A stretch of 64,000 nucleotides of DNA from Diadema antillarum (taxonomy: Eukaryota): NCBI RefSeq assembly GCF_040938485.1, contig NW_027271721.1:1550001-1614000 (forward strand), given 5' to 3'. This document shows, one piece after another, positions 32,729-37,360 of this stretch. The position numbers were made by a program, and so were the translations under genes. Within the stretch, counting starts at the first letter, position 1, and the number at the start of each line of letters is the position of its first letter. Under the pieces are notes generated by a model that saw only the letters and a list, made by a program, of their open reading frames with translations, was not told the origin of the DNA and did no database searches.

Positions 32729-32879
32729 CGCCAGTAAATAAAAGGGAGAAACCGTAGACGATTCGGATGAGGTTTGGATCTGATTTATTGCCGTGGCCGA
32801 GACAATCGACTACGGCATGCCAATTGTGTACAAACGTAGATTACTACATACACTGTATATAACACAACCAATACTGGCG
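32729..32879 (-). repeat. 3' LTR of element A
   Basis: Sense sequence CGCCAGTATTGG...AATAAA...TTTACTGGCG with an 8-bp terminal inverted repeat; identical to 37210-37360 by visual alignment. Confidence 0.95.
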
Positions 32880-32882
32880 TGA

Positions 32883-32900
32883 CTTCTTCTTTCTTCCTCT
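32883..32900 (-). promoter_or_regulatory. Polypurine tract of element A
   Basis: Sense AGAGGAAGAAAGAAGAAG, then TCA, then the 3' LTR. Confidence 0.85.
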
Positions 32901-34805
32901 GTCCTCTGTTCTCTGACAGCTTAATAATTACTTTCCATTCAACAATCAATCATATGTTTATACAACCTCAAAATTTGCCTCTGTTACAAACACTCTAAAA
33001 AATGGAAACTAATCACTAAACAAAACCACAACTGAACAATTAGCATATCACCCATCACTGTGATAACAATCACTATACTGTAGTTAATAACAAAACTCTA
33101 TCGCTGTCAACAAACAATTGATAACCTTATGCATAAACACATTGATCGTACAGACTATCAATGTCCAACAAAAATCTTTACCATTTAACCTCTACATACA
33201 TGTATATCGACACACAAATATAACTTGACTTGCTTTATGATTTTCACAAAAAAAAAACACAAAATCATCATATTCATATAAACTACACTGTATGTGCATC
33301 AAACTCCACTCACCAACATCATATTGTTCCTAGATTTCTGATAACTGAACACAAATCACATTTCACAACAATCTCACTATTGTGTACTGTATCCCAATAT
33401 CTTCTCTTGCCCCATTAATTAGTTAACTACGCTAACATGACACTAATAAAGCATAACAAAATTGAAAAAAAAACCCATACATGTATATATCATAATCAGA
33501 TACATAAACTATACACGGTCATCTGAATAAAACATGACATTCTTCACTAAGTTGAGCACGTACAATGGACATGGTACTTATAAAAACATATCTGTATATG
33601 GATTGTAACATTAAACCAGTGCAGACGTGAAAAACACTCTTTTGTTTTCATGAATCGATCCTGCTCAATGATAGTGGATAATCAATCCAGACAACCACAC
33701 TATGTAAATATGCATACCGGTAAATATGTTTAAGCTATACATACATGTATGTGTGCCAATCTTATGGGAAAAATGAACACAACTGTGCTAATACGGGGTA
33801 TGAGCATGATAACACTGCAAATCTGTAATACTGTACTGGAAACATACAAGTCTAGTTTACCATGAACAGTAATCAGGTAGCAAGGAAGATTGCCACCATT
33901 TATGAACATTAGTACAAAAAACAACAAGAAAACTTATCAGAGTTTTGAAGTGCCATGCTTACACAACAACATAGTAATAGATGTGTATACGACTGTACAT
34001 TATGTACCAAAAAAGTCGAACAGACAAATACAAAAGTGTACTGTCTTTAAAAAATTATACATACCAGTACATTCCACTCCTGTGTCCTATACATTAGGTC
34101 ATTAAACAATCTATGACCGTCAGTAAAAAAAGGACAATATAAATTTTAGGCTAACTAAATACAACATCAGCATAAGATATGTGTATGTACTTGCACAGAC
34201 TGCAAAACAATATTATCAGATAGTGTGTGATTCAAAATGAAACTCTGGAGAAATAATAAACATTAAAATAACTAGAAGGCTTGTGCATTTGCCATACAAA
34301 GTCATCCGTATGTTGACATCAACCTTGACAAAAATCGTACATGTCCAGTCTATCTACATGTCTAATTAAATACTGGTATAAATGAAACACAGTATGGTAC
34401 ATAGCTGCCATACTAGGAACAGTAAAAACAAAAATGCACCATATGCCTACCCGATAGCCAAAATGGTAATAACTACAAAAACACACATCGCATCCTTAAT
34501 CCAAAGGCCAAAATCTTTTCCTTGAAATAGATTCAGAACTCAAAAAATCACAACAGAAACTGTAAGAAAAAACAGATTCACAAAATTATCAAAACATCAA
34601 ATGATACCCAAAGAAGTTCACAAGACGTAAGATTCACTATCGCAATGACAAAAAGGTGGGTACCGGTATACAAACTACAATACAGACAGCTGATGCATGT
34701 GGAAAAATGTGAATTACGAAAACATACACATCACATTGAGCACCTACAGTATATACACACTACAAACATGGGTACAAAATACACAAAATAAACTTAAATG
34801 ACCAA

Positions 34806-37034
34806 TTAACCTGGAGGAGATAGGGGCATGGGAGGACCATGGGTTATCGCTGATGGGCGGGAGGAGTCAGGGGGTGCTGAGGGATGGGGGATCCGGAGCA
34901 CGCGGGGGAATAGGACATCCGTGATACCCACATCAGCGAAGCCATGGGTAGGAGCTCGGGGATCATCAGATGAGTGTTCGGTGGGGATCATCAGGTGGAA
35001 TGCATGCGAGACTCCATCATCGGGAGAGGGGGAGGAATCTCCTTCGGACCACAAACAGGACAGGCACAGGCCATTGTGCCATGGTGGAGCCTTCCAGGTT
35101 GGCTGTGTGTCAAGATCAGTGAGGCTAACGTCATCCATAGGGGGGCAGAGGCGAACAGCATTGTTGTAGGCAGTAGAACCCTCTGGGTGGATCTTGGGGA
35201 CCCCGTTGAAGACCATCATGAACTGGTGTTCACTGTCTGGCGGCGTGCAAGAGGGAAAGGCATCAGCAGGAGTGAGGTATTTGCCAGGAGGAGAACCTGT
35301 AGAAGATGGTACTTCACCCTGGACTGGCTGATGGGCGAATGTCGCGGTTGTCTCCTCCACACAGGCAGAACCATGGCTAGCGCAATGTCGATCGATGCCA
35401 AATACACGTATGTCCATGTGGGTTGACACCTTGGGTAGAGAGACATGGTCTGTGACAGGAAGAGTGTCCTCACCTGTCTGACTGGGAAGAAGCTTGGAGA
35501 AACCTTGAGGTAAGGTAGCTTCCACAAACTGGTACTGCTCATAGTGACTTTGAGGATCACTGTAGGTATTACACGAATTGTCAATGGGCATATATTGACC
35601 TTGGTTGTTAGGGTGTGAGTGTATGTGTGAATTCACTTGTGATTGGTGTGAAGTGTCTGTGAATGTATTGTCAATGTCAGCGTGAGGGTTTGTATTGCCC
35701 ATGAAAATGTTTGTGCTAGACTCGGTGAAGAGAGTAACAGAGCTAGGCTCAGTGAAGGGAGGAACAGAGCTCGGCTCAGTGGAGGGAGGACCAGAGCTAG
35801 GCTCAGTGGGGGGAGGACCAGAGCTGGGCTCAGTAGAGGGAGGACCAGAGCTGGGCTCAGTAGAGGAAGGAACAGAGCGAGGCTCAGTGAAGGGAGGACC
35901 AGAGCGAGGCTCAGTGAAGGGAGGACCAGAGCTGGGCTCAGTAGAGGGAGGAACAGAGCGAGGCTCAGTGAAGGGAGGACCAGAGCTAGGCTCAGTGAAG
36001 GGAGGAACAGAGCAGGGCTCAGTGGAGGGAATGGCCATATTGGGACTCTCAACATCACAGACTTCAATGCCATCTGCACCTGCAGGATCAAAAGTCCATG
36101 AATCACTGTCAGAATTTGTCCCATATTTCTGTTCACACTCACACCAAACGCCTTTGTCCACAGCAGTGATCTTATTCTGTCCATCATCATAATTCAGTAA
36201 CACACACTCTATTTCTTCATCTTCAGTATTCCACATCTCACATTCAAACCCTGGATCTTGCACTTTTGCCTCTTTCACCATTAAGCCTACAGCAACACCT
36301 TCAGGCTGCATGTTGTGTGACTTACACTCTGCTTCGGCATTCTCTGTACTTTCCATCTCACACTCAAACTCATTGTAATCATGCGCACGTATCTCCTCCA
36401 TTACACCGACATGAACGGATTGTGCGTGATGAGTGTTACGTGAATCATAGCCAGCGGATCGATCGCTGAGACTATAAGTGTACATAGTATCATCTCCAAA
36501 CATAATCTGACCTTTCGAGGGACGAACAGCAATATCATTTTGCTCCATGAAATCTGCACCTGCGAGCACATCTACACCGTCATTCATCACATGATCATCC
36601 ACAACGAAACCGTTAAACATCAAGTCACACTCATAGTGGTACAATGTACACGAAACAATACCAACAATATCAACCTCTGGAAGATCACCCGAGTGACCAC
36701 TGGGTGCATCAATGTAATCCTCATATCCAGACCCATCGACAAGGATTTCTAAACCAAGCATATCAGCTGCAGTTTCACTGATCAGACTACAGACAGAGCC
36801 ACTTCGAACTTCAACCTGTATCTGATTATCCTTCCCGTGCCCTGTAGCAGGGAAGTGTGGAGGTTCACGTTTTGTCGCGTCTGACAACGCGGATTGCTGG
36901 CCAAGGCCAACCTGCTGGCCCGCGGGACACCTCCGCTTGGATGCCTCAGCGGCCGGGGCTGCCCGTCGCTGCATTGACGGGGAGCCGGTGGACCCGGGCA
37001 CGGCGGCGCATCGCTTTGTTGATGCAACGTGCAT
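34806..37034 (-). CDS. 742-aa ORF: basic N-terminus, catalytically altered retropepsin-like domain, acidic/Cys region, 9-aa Pro/Ser repeats, Pro-rich tail
   Basis: ATG at 37034, TAA at 34806. Segments such as DVLAGADFMEQNDIAVRPSKGQIMFGDDTMYTY align with element B protease EVLAGTPFMERNDVAIRPAKRQISLDDGTVYSY. VRSG replaces VDSG. Confidence 0.85.
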   Translation of the reverse strand: MHVASTKRCAAVPGSTGSPSMQRRAAPAAEASKRRCPAGQQVGLGQQSALSDATKREPPHFPATGHGKDNQIQVEVRSGSVCSLISETAADMLGLEILVDGSGYEDYIDAPSGHSGDLPEVDIVGIVSCTLYHYECDLMFNGFVVDDHVMNDGVDVLAGADFMEQNDIAVRPSKGQIMFGDDTMYTYSLSDRSAGYDSRNTHHAQSVHVGVMEEIRAHDYNEFECEMESTENAEAECKSHNMQPEGVAVGLMVKEAKVQDPGFECEMWNTEDEEIECVLLNYDDGQNKITAVDKGVWCECEQKYGTNSDSDSWTFDPAGADGIEVCDVESPNMAIPSTEPCSVPPFTEPSSGPPFTEPRSVPPSTEPSSGPPFTEPRSGPPFTEPRSVPSSTEPSSGPPSTEPSSGPPPTEPSSGPPSTEPSSVPPFTEPSSVTLFTESSTNIFMGNTNPHADIDNTFTDTSHQSQVNSHIHSHPNNQGQYMPIDNSCNTYSDPQSHYEQYQFVEATLPQGFSKLLPSQTGEDTLPVTDHVSLPKVSTHMDIRVFGIDRHCASHGSACVEETTATFAHQPVQGEVPSSTGSPPGKYLTPADAFPSCTPPDSEHQFMMVFNGVPKIHPEGSTAYNNAVRLCPPMDDVSLTDLDTQPTWKAPPWHNGLCLSCLWSEGDSSPSPDDGVSHAFHLMIPTEHSSDDPRAPTHGFADVGITDVLFPRVLRIPHPSAPPDSSRPSAITHGPPMPLSPPG
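35720..36030 (-). repeat. Coding 27-bp minisatellite, ~11-12 units of PP(F/S)TEP(S/R)S(G/V)
   Basis: Unit GGCTCAGTG(A/G)AGGGAGG(A/ACC)AGAGC read directly; the unit length preserves frame. Confidence 0.9.
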
Positions 37035-37199
37035 ATCACTACATGGGACTACACACTATAAATCGCCCAAATACTGTATACGTCACCCGAATTATCACTG
37101 TAAATTACAACAGAACGCCTACTCCTGCGTATATGAGGCGAGATTCTCCTTTCTCTTGGACTAGGGTAGAGCAAATTAGTGGCGTTAAATTCGCATCCA

Positions 37200-37209
37200 G
37201 CTGCCACCA
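37200..37209 (-). promoter_or_regulatory. Primer-binding site of element A (tRNA-Leu type)
   Basis: Sense TGGTGGCAGC directly after the 5' LTR; complementary to the ...GCTGCCA-CCA 3' end of animal tRNA-Leu(AAG/UAG). Confidence 0.8.
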
Positions 37210-37360
37210 CGCCAGTAAATAAAAGGGAGAAACCGTAGACGATTCGGATGAGGTTTGGATCTGATTTATTGCCGTGGCCGAGACAATCGACTACGGCATG
37301 CCAATTGTGTACAAACGTAGATTACTACATACACTGTATATAACACAACCAATACTGGCG
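37210..37360 (-). repeat. 5' LTR of element A
   Basis: Direct repeat of 32729-32879, followed on the sense strand by the PBS. Confidence 0.95.

What the first reader, a model, noticed from the sequence alone, without database searches (positions are those of the whole stretch)
32729..37360. Young non-autonomous LTR element that keeps a 742-aa ORF built on a catalytically dead protease
Seen: identical LTRs, intact TSD, PBS and PPT, no recognisable Gag capsid or Zn knuckle, no RT, RNase H or IN, yet a 2.2-kb stop-free ORF. Its residues ~58-190 align clearly with element B's protease, including the DVLAG.DFM..ND..VRP.K.QI motif. The catalytic D-S-G reads R-S-G (codon CGA at 36804-36806, which differs from both Asp codons at all three positions, so a single read error is unlikely). 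Known: retropepsins need one Asp from each subunit of a homodimer, and inactive subunits can act as dominant negatives. Non-autonomous LTR elements usually encode nothing or Gag only. Inference: a satellite retroelement encoding a pseudoprotease that binds the helper's Gag-Pol/PR dimer, either to gain entry to particles or to modulate or poison the helper.
Basis: partly seen in the sequence, partly recalled or inferred. Interest (0 to 1): 0.9.

Follow-up and report, generated by a model that had tools for sequence, protein, structure and literature searches.

The report
Satellite retrotransposon encoding a dead protease
This sea-urchin jumping gene cannot copy itself, yet it and its relatives in at least two orders of sea urchins all keep one protein built on a viral-type protease whose catalytic acid is replaced by a positively charged residue, most likely so it can latch onto the working protease of the element it depends on.

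Summary
Window 32729-37360 (minus strand) is a 4.6-kb LTR element. It has identical 151-nt LTRs, a 3-bp target duplication, a PBS, a PPT and one 742-aa ORF. It has no Gag core, RT, RNase H or integrase. Residues 58-190 fold as a retropepsin and align with the protease of element B (51711-58446), but read R-S-G where D-S-G is expected.

This is a family feature, not decay. Nine of nine relatives examined are LTR-bounded 4.5-5.5-kb elements with the same architecture. They come from Diadema, Lytechinus variegatus, L. pictus and an unnamed ENA assembly.

In a protease tree the satellite domains form one clade (support 100/100) of 26 diverged sequences. None has Asp; 24 have Arg, Lys or His. The helper-type clade has Asp.

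The domain is under purifying selection (pN 0.30 against saturated pS 0.76). It keeps the Ser-Gly and dimer-interface motifs, has a remodelled flap, and carries a net charge near -16.

The rest of the protein is a short N-terminal motif resembling the helper's Gag start, plus about 550 residues that model as disordered.

The most likely function is charge-complementary pairing with the helper's protease domain. This is inferred, not shown. I found no prior description of such an element.

The parts
37361..37363 (-). 5' copy of the 3-bp target-site duplication (GAA)
   Evidence: 3-bp TSDs also occur in related elements (TAG, TAA, TTG, CTC) and in element B (CTT).
37210..37360 (-). 5' LTR, 151 nt. 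It starts CGCCAG, ends CTGGCG and contains AATAAA at 37270-37265.
   Evidence: 100% identical to the 3' LTR. Boundaries were set by comparing flanks in nine elements.
37192..37209 (-). Primer-binding site, TGGTGGCAGC... directly after the LTR
   Evidence: Thirteen nt across the LTR/PBS junction are identical to element B. The same PBS core occurs in L001, L002, L003 and L008.
37035..37191 (-). 5' leader, with a conserved block GTAGTCCCATGTAG (37052-37039) just upstream of the ATG
   Evidence: Alignment of eight satellite elements. AGTCCCA is also present upstream of B's ATG.
34806..37034 (-). Single ORF, 742 aa (the stop codon is 34806-34808)
   Evidence: A 90%-identical 747-aa protein is annotated in Diadema setosum.
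36918..37034 (-). Codons 1-39: a basic N-terminal motif containing Cys (MHVAST.RC ... APKR.CP). It is the most nucleotide-conserved part of the family.
   Evidence: Best blastn segment between diverged families is 79% over 136 nt. Mean pS is 0.46 here against 0.74-0.76 next door. It resembles the helper Gag N-terminus APKQWCL (hhalign E=3.5e-4, probability 37%).
36465..36863 (-). Pseudo-retropepsin domain (residues 58-190)
   Evidence: BLASTP to B's protease E=3e-14. AF2 pLDDT 79. Foldseek best hits are Ddi1 RVP and then retroviral proteases. Purifying selection.
36804..36806 (-). Arg77 codon (CGA) at the position of the catalytic Asp
   Evidence: Relatives carry CGA, CGT, AGA, CAC, CAT or AAG at this position.
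36030..36464 (-). Acidic region containing Cys (residues 191-335). It is variable between families.
   Evidence: 34 D+E against 9 K+R. pN is about equal to pS between families. No predicted structure.
35715..36030 (-). 27-nt tandem repeat, 11.7 copies, encoding the 9-aa unit TEPSSGPP(F/S)
   Evidence: A TEPSS-type 27-nt array is also present in the Lytechinus element L007 and in P0003-P0006.
34809..35714 (-). Tail rich in Pro, Ser and Thr (residues 441-742). It models as disordered. The C-terminal ~130 residues are weakly conserved in a subset of families (PTWK.PPW, P.APPD).
32899..34805 (-). About 1.9 kb of AT-rich 3' non-coding region with no ORF, no RT/RH/IN remnant and no Rfam match
   Evidence: All related elements have 1.2-2.8 kb here.
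32883..32898 (-). Polypurine tract core, followed by TCA and then the 3' LTR
32729..32879 (-). 3' LTR, 151 nt
32726..32728 (-). 3' copy of the TSD (GAA)
51711..58446 (-). Element B, an intact autonomous relative and candidate helper. It has 149-nt LTRs (99% identical), TSD CTT and one 1652-aa Gag-PR-RT-RH-IN ORF (58132..53174) with D-S-G-A.
   Evidence: It shares the LTR ends, PBS core and PPT core with the satellite.

Best explanation
WHAT IT IS (confidence about 0.9). It is a young copy of a non-autonomous 'satellite' LTR retrotransposon. The family descends from, and depends on, a widespread Ty3/Gypsy-like family of marine invertebrates, to which element B in the same window belongs.

The satellite keeps the helper-type LTR ends, 3-bp TSD, PBS core and PPT. 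It has lost the Gag core, RT, RNase H and integrase.

Its single protein has three parts:
- a short basic N-terminal motif that resembles the helper's Gag start;
- a catalytically dead retropepsin domain;
- about 550 residues that model as disordered.

HOW IT MOST LIKELY WORKS (inferred, confidence about 0.4). The pseudoprotease is a docking module. It keeps the elements that hold retropepsin dimers together: the N- and C-terminal strands, the Ser-Gly of the active-site loop, and the AG.PFME.ND helix. At the dimer centre it carries Arg, Lys or His where the helper has Asp. Its surface is strongly acidic.

These features should disfavour satellite-satellite homodimers. They should favour a salt-bridged heterodimer with the near-neutral, Asp-bearing protease domain in the helper's single-ORF Gag-Pol. 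Because every helper Gag carries a protease domain, such docking sites are abundant in an assembling particle.

The satellite protein would then enter helper particles at little cost to maturation. It might bring along its own RNA, held through the basic N-terminus or recognised through the nucleotide-conserved leader and first 40 codons. Helper RT and IN would then copy and integrate the satellite RNA through the shared PBS, PPT and LTR ends.
For: Architecture.

Relatedness to B: the LTR ends, 13 nt of LTR/PBS junction and the PPT core are shared, and the protease domains align at E=3e-14. Autonomous members with the satellite-type CTGGCG|TGGTGGCAGCT junction exist (L025 and L073).

Family conservation: nine of nine loci are LTR-bounded with the same layout, and eight of nine ORFs are intact.

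Loss of Asp is old and consistent: the satellite clade has 100/100 support, and 26 of 26 members lack Asp (R15, K5, H4, S1, C1), while the helper clade has Asp. Six different codons encode basic residues at the site. Within 90% clusters, 24 of 25 members showing the site keep the R or H of their cluster; the exception is a 148-aa fragment with Tyr.

Selection: in the protease domain pN is 0.30 and pS 0.76; in the adjacent linker pN is 0.60 and pS 0.74.

Fold: pLDDT 79; Ddi1 RVP matches have target-normalised TM 0.64-0.80, followed by retroviral proteases. A profile search hits Ddi1 at E=7e-5.

Interface motifs are shared by satellite and helper consensus, while the flap is replaced by a satellite-specific D..GY.DY motif.

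Net charge averages -16 in 23 satellite domains and -1 in 16 helper domains.

Precedent: an engineered HIV-1 protease with the inactivating substitutions D25K/G49W/I50W, attributed to McPhee et al. [quoted passage not shown] That the Lys favours heterodimers by pairing with Asp25 is my recollection of that paper, which could not be opened.
Against: - There is no evidence here that the protein is made, and no dimer model or binding data. The structure tool folds single chains only.
- A heterodimer would be catalytically dead, so docking carries a cost for the helper and therefore for the satellite.
- The remodelled flap and extreme acidity could equally serve binding to something else, such as a basic Gag or IN region or a host factor.
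- Apart from the ends, PBS core and PPT, the LTRs and leaders of A and B are dissimilar. B itself may not be the actual helper.
- The copies analysed came from protein databases, which favours intact ORFs. Truncated members also exist.
- The AF2 alignment included helper proteases, which may have guided the fold.
Confidence: 0.5

Rival explanations
1. Trans-dominant brake. The pseudoprotease forms dead heterodimers mainly to inhibit or delay helper protease activation. It would act as copy-number control or as interference by the parasite of a parasite, comparable in logic to self-encoded retroelement restriction factors.
For: The same structural features as the docking model. The engineered D25K-type HIV protease subunit is described by its authors as an inhibitor of viral maturation (reference cited in PMC1865004).
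Against: The satellite needs the helper's processed RT and IN, so strong inhibition would harm the satellite itself. The helper makes one protease domain per Gag (single ORF), so inhibition would need near-stoichiometric amounts. Many young satellite copies with identical LTRs show that the pair is currently mobile.
Confidence: 0.15
2. The pseudoprotease binds something else. The dead retropepsin fold, with its new acidic flap motif and very negative surface, would be an adaptor for a basic partner (helper nucleocapsid-like or integrase regions, or a host protein). The basic residue at the old active site would be only structural.
For: The satellite-specific conserved D..GY.DY motif replaces the helper flap. 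Net charge is about -16. The long disordered tail with a conserved 9-aa repeat is typical of scaffold or adaptor proteins.
Against: It does not explain why the site stays Arg, Lys or His through many codon changes, nor why the dimer-interface motifs are the parts best conserved with the helper.
Confidence: 0.2
3. The frame is kept open for RNA reasons, and the protein is incidental. Translation through most of the RNA would protect the genomic RNA (for example from nonsense-mediated decay), or would serve a cis-acting RNA signal at the start of the ORF.
For: The first 44 codons show constraint at synonymous sites (pS 0.46 against about 0.75 nearby). In the L001/L002 pair both pS and pN are below 0.1 there. 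The middle of the ORF evolves almost neutrally (pN/pS 0.7-0.9) yet stays open.
Against: The protease-like domain shows clear protein-level selection with saturated synonymous sites, invariant residues and a preserved fold. RNA structure in the conserved 5' block has almost no covariation support: covariation term -0.09 kcal/mol, and 4 of 30 pairs with compensatory changes. No alternative frame is open in all elements.
Confidence: 0.07
4. It is a decaying remnant of an autonomous element, or a host gene that happens to lie between two repeats. The Asp-to-Arg change would then be a random lesion.
For: None beyond the absence of RT and IN.
Against: The same architecture recurs in nine loci from four assemblies, with TSDs. 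The satellite clade is monophyletic, deep and Asp-free. Selection acts on the domain. There are multiple copies per genome.
Confidence: 0.02

Closest known systems
Semi-autonomous GAG-Pro Gypsy elements of wheat and barley (RLG_Sabrina_SA, RLG_WHAM; PMC9744471)
   Same: They are LTR retrotransposons that lack RT and integrase but keep an intact ORF containing a protease domain. They co-evolve with autonomous partners.
   Different: Those elements keep a full GAG, and their authors describe the protease as an ordinary protease domain. Here the Gag core is gone, the catalytic Asp is replaced by a basic residue throughout an old clade, and the flap is remodelled. They are plant Gypsy lineages, whereas this is an echinoid member of a marine invertebrate lineage.
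Classical non-autonomous LTR elements (LARD, TRIM, ETn/MusD-type pairs, BARE2; from general knowledge, not tested here)
   Same: They share LTR ends, PBS and PPT with a helper, lack the enzymatic genes, and are mobilised in trans.
   Different: These encode nothing or a defective Gag. None is known to me to maintain a pseudoenzyme under selection.
Engineered trans-dominant HIV-1 protease subunit D25K/G49W/I50W (McPhee et al. 1996, cited in PMC1865004)
   Same: The catalytic Asp is replaced by a basic residue and the flap is altered. The result is an inactive subunit designed to pair with the wild-type subunit.
   Different: That subunit is a laboratory design in a lentivirus. Here an analogous pattern arose naturally and persists in a mobile satellite. 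Heterodimer formation is not shown here.
Ddi1 / RVP retropepsin-like domains (PDB 4rgh, 3s8i, 5yq8, 7d66, 4z2z)
   Same: They are the best structural neighbours of the modelled domain (Foldseek E 4e-7 to 1e-4) and give the best profile hit (E=7e-5). They form homodimeric retropepsin folds.
   Different: They are host proteins with an intact D-[ST]-G-A and ubiquitin-related flanking domains. Sequence identity is only 11-19%.
Ty3/Gypsy (Metaviridae) LTR retrotransposons, the superfamily of helper element B
   Same: The domain order is Gag-PR-RT-RH-IN. B's RT/RNase H best matches Ty3 in the PDB (E=6e-26). Pfam finds RT_RNaseH_2 and Integrase_H2C2.
   Different: The LTRs end CG...CG instead of TG...CA. 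The TSD is 3 bp rather than 4-6 bp. The integrase core is not recognised by Pfam rve at E<=1. The satellite itself has none of the pol domains.

Membership tests
LTR retrotransposon (structural definition) | Two direct long terminal repeats flanked by a target-site duplication | tested here: met
   The LTRs are 151 nt and 100% identical. The TSD is 3 bp, GAA. 3-bp TSDs are seen in 5 of the 6 satellite elements whose flanks could be read, and in B.
LTR retrotransposon (structural definition) | tRNA primer-binding site next to the 5' LTR and a polypurine tract next to the 3' LTR | tested here: met
   The PBS starts TGG directly after the LTR, and a 16-nt purine run lies 3 nt before the 3' LTR. 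The primer tRNA was not identified. No tRNA gene is in the window. A tRNA-Leu-like 3' end is only my recollection.
Non-autonomous (satellite) LTR element | Lacks reverse transcriptase, RNase H and integrase | tested here: met
   No Pfam hit. tblastn with B's polyprotein finds only the protease segment. The same layout and size occur in eight related loci.
Non-autonomous (satellite) LTR element | Shares cis-acting ends with an autonomous partner present in the same genome | tested here: met
   LTR 5' CGCCAGT, 3' ...GCG, PBS TGGTGGCAGC and the PPT core are shared with intact element B, which lies 14 kb away.
Non-autonomous (satellite) LTR element | Mobilised in trans by that partner | not testable with these tools
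   This needs a retrotransposition or particle-packaging experiment.
Retropepsin (retroviral-type aspartic protease) | Retropepsin fold | tested here: met
   AF2 pLDDT 79 and pTM 0.74. Foldseek hits are Ddi1 RVP, EIAV, RSV, M-PMV and HIV proteases.
Retropepsin (retroviral-type aspartic protease) | Catalytic Asp in D-[ST]-G-A | tested here: not met
   The motif is R-S-G-S here. In the satellite clade, 26 of 26 sequences lack Asp. It is therefore a pseudoprotease, not a member in the enzymatic sense.
Retropepsin (retroviral-type aspartic protease) | Functions as a dimer | not testable with these tools
   Only single chains can be modelled. Interface motifs are conserved.
Semi-autonomous GAG-Pro LTR elements (Sabrina_SA/WHAM type) | Intact GAG (capsid, with or without nucleocapsid) upstream of the protease | tested here: not met
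   Only about 57 residues precede the domain. There is no Gag Pfam hit and no similarity to B's Gag beyond the first ~13 residues.
B family (Ty3/Gypsy-like lineage of marine invertebrates) | Protease-domain homology specifically to this lineage | tested here: met
   All Asp-bearing hits to the domain in a search of 1.8 billion proteins are pieces or whole polyproteins of this lineage. They share the SPY..F..H....DSGATGNM context and the Gag start APKQWCL.

The most novel reading that the evidence does not exclude
A naturally evolved 'charge-reversed' protease subunit acts as a hijacking device. An ancient lineage of satellite retrotransposons would gain entry to its helper's particles, or control them, by forming salt-bridged dead heterodimers between its Arg/Lys/His pseudoprotease and the Asp protease domain of the helper's Gag-Pol. 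This would be a mode of parasitism on a retroelement that has not been described, and it mirrors a protein-engineering strategy once designed against HIV.
Probability: 0.4. Interest if true: 0.85.

Novelty: new variant of a known kind. Interest (0 to 1): 0.72.

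Why it matters
Non-autonomous LTR elements are usually thought to survive on cis-acting signals alone. This family has kept one protein module, an inactivated protease, under selection through deep divergence and in at least two orders of sea urchins.

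If that module docks on the helper's protease, it reveals a new route by which one retroelement parasitises another. It would also be a natural counterpart of engineered trans-dominant retroviral protease subunits.

It would also give a tractable system for asking how protease dimerisation inside Gag-Pol is used, or abused, during particle assembly. Both partners are intact and sit side by side in one genome.

The lineage also has unusual integration hallmarks: a 3-bp TSD and CG...CG termini. Its helper family is very widely shared among marine phyla.

Tried and rejected
- Remnants of RT, RH or IN, or any similarity to B outside the protease. Searched by tblastn and blastn (word size 7); none found.

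- Other copies of the satellite in the window: none.

- Exact look-up of the window's ORF in public assemblies: not on record. The source genome is therefore inferred only as Diadema-like. The D. setosum copy L003 is 93.6% identical over 4.35 kb, lies in different flanks, and has LTRs 99.3% identical.

- dN/dS between the window copy and L003. There are too few differences in the protease domain (4 in 420 nt) to be informative. Diverged families were used instead.

- RNA structure in the conserved 5' block. The RNAalifold consensus has three hairpins but almost no covariation, so the result is inconclusive.

- An overlapping alternative ORF as the cause of synonymous constraint. Rejected, because L004 and L007 have stops in the other frames.

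- Rfam scan of the element: no match.

- Full-length AF2 model. Nothing folds outside the protease-like domain (mean pLDDT 36).

- C-terminal motif (P.APPD) as a universal module shared with the helper's C-terminus (PP.PPDIP.ELSTP). It is conserved only in a subset of families and is low-complexity, so I did not rely on it.

- 16-mer scan of metagenomes with the LTR/PBS junction. Most hits were chance bacterial matches; only four loci carried B-family coding sequence.

- An apparent Asp 'revertant' (P0268). This was a regular-expression false positive in the tail, not in the protease domain.

- Literature searches for a described pseudoprotease-encoding non-autonomous LTR element found none. 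McPhee et al. 1996 could not be opened.

Full report
**1. What is in the window**

On the minus strand, 37360..32729 is a complete LTR element of 4,632 bp.
- The two LTRs (37360-37210 and 32879-32729) are identical.
- They begin CGCCAG and end CTGGCG, and are flanked by a 3-bp duplication, GAA.
- A primer-binding site beginning TGGTGGCAGC follows the 5' LTR directly.
- A 16-nt purine tract precedes the 3' LTR.
- The only long ORF (37034..34806, 742 aa) starts 327 nt into the element. It is followed by 1.9 kb of AT-rich sequence with no ORF.
- Pfam finds nothing in the ORF.
- tblastn with the polyprotein of the neighbouring autonomous element B finds only one segment, the protease.
- By BLASTP, residues 56-202 align with B residues 351-484 at 32% identity, E=3e-14. 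B's V-D-S-G-A corresponds to V-R-S-G-S. The Arg codon is CGA at 36806-36804.

Two refinements apply: the TSD is only 3 bp, and the extreme N-terminus does resemble the helper's Gag start.

**2. Relation to element B**

B (51711-58446) has 149-nt LTRs that are 99% identical, a 3-bp TSD (CTT) and one 1652-aa ORF.
- The ORF contains a Gag region with a CX2C...H...C knuckle, D-S-G-A, RT, RNase H and an H2C2 integrase.
- Its RT/RNase H is closest to Ty3 among solved structures (E=6e-26).
- A and B share several cis features: the LTR start (CGCCAGT), the LTR end (...GCG), 13 nt across the LTR/PBS junction, the PPT core, an AATAAA in the LTR and a short AGTCCCA block before the ATG.
- Otherwise their LTRs and leaders differ.
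- B's family is very widespread. Homologues of about 1,630 aa at 55-60% identity occur in abalone, pearl oyster, a coral and many marine samples.
- Two close relatives from ocean metagenomes keep the same LTR ends and an 18-nt PBS.
- Autonomous-type members with exactly the satellite-type junction (CTGGCG|TGGTGGCAGCT) also exist, in L025 and L073.

**3. The ORF is a conserved family, always inside the same kind of element**

- A word-indexed search found a 747-aa protein in Diadema setosum (90% identity), a 932-aa protein in Lytechinus variegatus, and four ~700-aa proteins at 28-35% identity over 56-100% of the query (full length for two of the four).
- An exhaustive phmmer search of 1.8 billion representatives found 132 hits. 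About 25 clusters have the same N-terminus plus protease-like domain.
- Named sources are only echinoids: Diadema setosum (Diadematoida), and Lytechinus variegatus and L. pictus (Temnopleuroida). The rest come from ENA; every locus I fetched from there belongs to one unnamed assembly, ERZ26222911.
- I fetched eight loci. All eight are bounded by LTRs of 129-185 nt that are 95-100% identical, 4.5-5.5 kb end to end. They have CGCCA..(C/T)TGGCG-type termini and a PBS beginning TGGTG. Where the flanks are readable they have 3-bp TSDs: TAG, TAA, TTG and CTC, with one mismatch.
- Seven of the eight carry an intact ORF of 700-968 aa starting 320-376 nt from the 5' end. The L. pictus copy L008 is interrupted.
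- The D. setosum copy lies in different flanks. It is 93.6% identical to the window copy overall, and its LTRs are 99.3% identical.
- The window's exact ORF is not on record. The window is therefore from Diadema or a close relative, and is not human.

**4. The lost Asp is ancestral to the whole satellite lineage, and the site stays basic**

- In an alignment of 56 protease domains, every helper-type sequence that is not obviously degenerate has D-S/T-G-A. The satellite-type sequences have R (15), K (5), H (4), S (1) or C (1).
- A maximum-likelihood tree splits the two groups with 100/100 support. The satellite side has long internal branches.
- At the DNA level the site is encoded by CGA, CGT, AGA, CAC, CAT and AAG in nine loci. 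The positive side chain has thus been kept through repeated codon turnover.
- Within 90%-identity clusters, 24 of 25 members that show the site keep the cluster's R or H. The exception is a 148-aa fragment with Tyr. An apparent Asp was a false match in the tail.

**5. Selection**

The figures below are Nei-Gojobori proportions averaged over 21 pairs of seven diverged elements.

| Region | pS | pN |
|---|---|---|
| Protease-like domain | 0.76 (saturated) | 0.30 |
| Linker just upstream | 0.74 | 0.60 |
| First 44 codons | 0.46 | 0.23 |

- The domain is under clear protein-level constraint.
- The first 44 codons are also constrained at synonymous sites. They form the best-conserved nucleotide block between families, at 79% over 136 nt. 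A cis-acting nucleic-acid signal probably overlaps the start of the ORF.
- RNAalifold proposes three hairpins there, but covariation is negligible. No alternative frame is open in all elements.
- The middle of the ORF evolves almost neutrally (pN/pS 0.7-0.9) yet stays open.
- The last ~130 codons are weakly conserved in a subset of families only.
- Caveat: the copies came from protein databases, which favours intact frames. Truncated members exist in every cluster.

**6. Structure and chemistry of the domain**

- With a 39-sequence alignment, AlphaFold2 gives pLDDT 79 and pTM 0.74.
- Foldseek's best PDB matches are the retropepsin-like domains of Ddi1 (E 4e-7 to 1e-4, target-normalised TM 0.64-0.80), followed by the EIAV, RSV, M-PMV and HIV proteases.
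- The profile alone also hits Ddi1 (E=7e-5).
- Positions conserved in both satellite and helper consensus cluster in four places: the N-terminal strand (P.F), the S-G after the lost Asp, the AG.PFME.ND helix, and the RP.K..I.(F)GD C-terminal strands.
- From the known architecture of retropepsin dimers, these are the parts that form the dimer interface.
- The helper's flap (Q.A.QADG) is replaced by a satellite-specific motif, D..GY.DY.
- The satellite domains are strikingly acidic. Mean net charge is -16 (range -8 to -19, n=23), against -1 for helper domains (n=16).
- The full-length model shows no structure outside this domain (mean pLDDT 36).
- The rest of the protein consists of a basic N-terminal motif, an acidic region containing Cys, 11.7 copies of a 27-nt repeat encoding TEPSSGPP(F/S), and a tail rich in Pro, Ser and Thr.
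- The N-terminal motif (M..AST.RC...APKR.CP) looks like the helper's invariant Gag start (MA.T.RAPKQWCL) with a ~22-residue insertion. Profile comparison gives E=3.5e-4 but only 37% probability over 13 columns, so this is suggestive only.

**7. Interpretation**

Shown:
- This is a satellite LTR retrotransposon lineage derived from the B family.
- It has lost all enzymatic functions.
- It maintains, under purifying selection, a catalytically dead retropepsin with a basic residue at the catalytic position.

Inferred:
- The domain is a heterodimerisation module for the helper's protease domain.
- The reasoning is that interface elements are retained, and a cation sits opposite the partner's Asp.
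- The very negative surface should oppose self-association.
- The helper supplies one protease domain per Gag, because Gag-Pol is a single ORF.
- The same design principle was used on purpose in an engineered HIV-1 protease subunit (D25K/G49W/I50W; McPhee et al. 1996 as cited in PMC1865004). The salt-bridge rationale is my recollection of that paper.

Open question: whether the result is mainly docking and packaging, which I favour because the satellite needs processed RT and IN, or a brake on the helper. Binding to a different partner cannot be excluded.

**8. Comparison with what is known, and novelty**

- Non-autonomous LTR elements that keep part of the coding capacity are known. Wheat RLG_Sabrina_SA and RLG_WHAM encode GAG plus protease without RT or INT (PMC9744471).
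- The differences here are the absence of a Gag core, and a protease domain that is an old, conserved pseudoenzyme with a charge-reversed centre and a new flap motif.
- Three full-text searches found no description of such an element.
- I therefore class it as a new variant of a known kind, of high interest to specialists in mobile elements and retroviral assembly.

**9. Limits**

- There are no expression data, no dimer modelling and no unbiased genome-wide copy census.
- The organism behind ERZ26222911 is unknown.
- Identification of the primer tRNA as a tRNA-Leu-like species rests on memory only.
The interrupted copy (L008) was left as it is.

Noticed in passing
window 51711-58446 (minus strand): Element B is an apparently intact, young autonomous LTR retrotransposon with 149-nt LTRs (99% identical), TSD CTT and a 1652-aa single ORF. 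Its family has ~1,630-aa homologues at 55-60% identity in abalone, pearl oyster, a stony coral and many marine metagenome or transcriptome assemblies. This is unusually high conservation across phyla and makes it a candidate for horizontal transfer.
   Followed up: partly
window 37360/32729 and 58446/51711; L001-L010: Both the satellite and the helper lineage have LTRs ending CG...CG instead of the usual TG...CA, and make 3-bp target duplications (GAA, TAG, TAA, TTG, CTC, CTT). The helper's integrase core is not recognised by Pfam rve at E<=1. This suggests an atypical integrase.
   Followed up: partly
window 36918-37052 (minus strand); same region in L001-L007: The last ~15 nt of the leader and the first ~40 codons are the most nucleotide-conserved part of the satellite family, with reduced synonymous divergence. 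In several elements a tiny upstream ATG followed by a stop within 1-2 codons sits immediately before the main ATG. This may be a packaging or translation-control signal. Structure evidence is inconclusive.
   Followed up: partly
window 35715-36030; L007 6416-6785: A 27-nt tandem repeat encoding a TEPSS-type 9-residue unit is present in the satellite ORFs of Diadema, Lytechinus and the ENA assembly, although the surrounding sequence is almost unconstrained. Its function is unknown.
   Followed up: no
window 3813-4390, 27031-27597, 31112-31688: Three copies of a ~580-nt repeat. The first and third are 97-98% identical; the second is 63-82% identical. It is unrelated to elements A and B and contains no long ORF. 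It is probably another interspersed repeat or solo LTR.
   Followed up: no
protein P0135 (695 aa, protease-like domain at 272-395): A protein whose retropepsin-like domain reads V-S-G-S at the catalytic site, yet it falls on a long branch in the helper clade and has a different N-terminus. It may be an independent second case of Asp loss.
   Followed up: no
L010 (TARA metagenome scaffold) 468-820: The contig runs PPT, LTR, PBS and then the ORF. This is the order expected from a one-LTR circle or a collapsed tandem assembly of a B-family element in an ocean metagenome.
   Followed up: no
window 34828-35426 (plus strand): Two antisense ORFs (113 and 150 aa) overlap the GC-rich 3' end of the main ORF. 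They are probably a compositional by-product. Their conservation in other copies was not examined.
   Followed up: no
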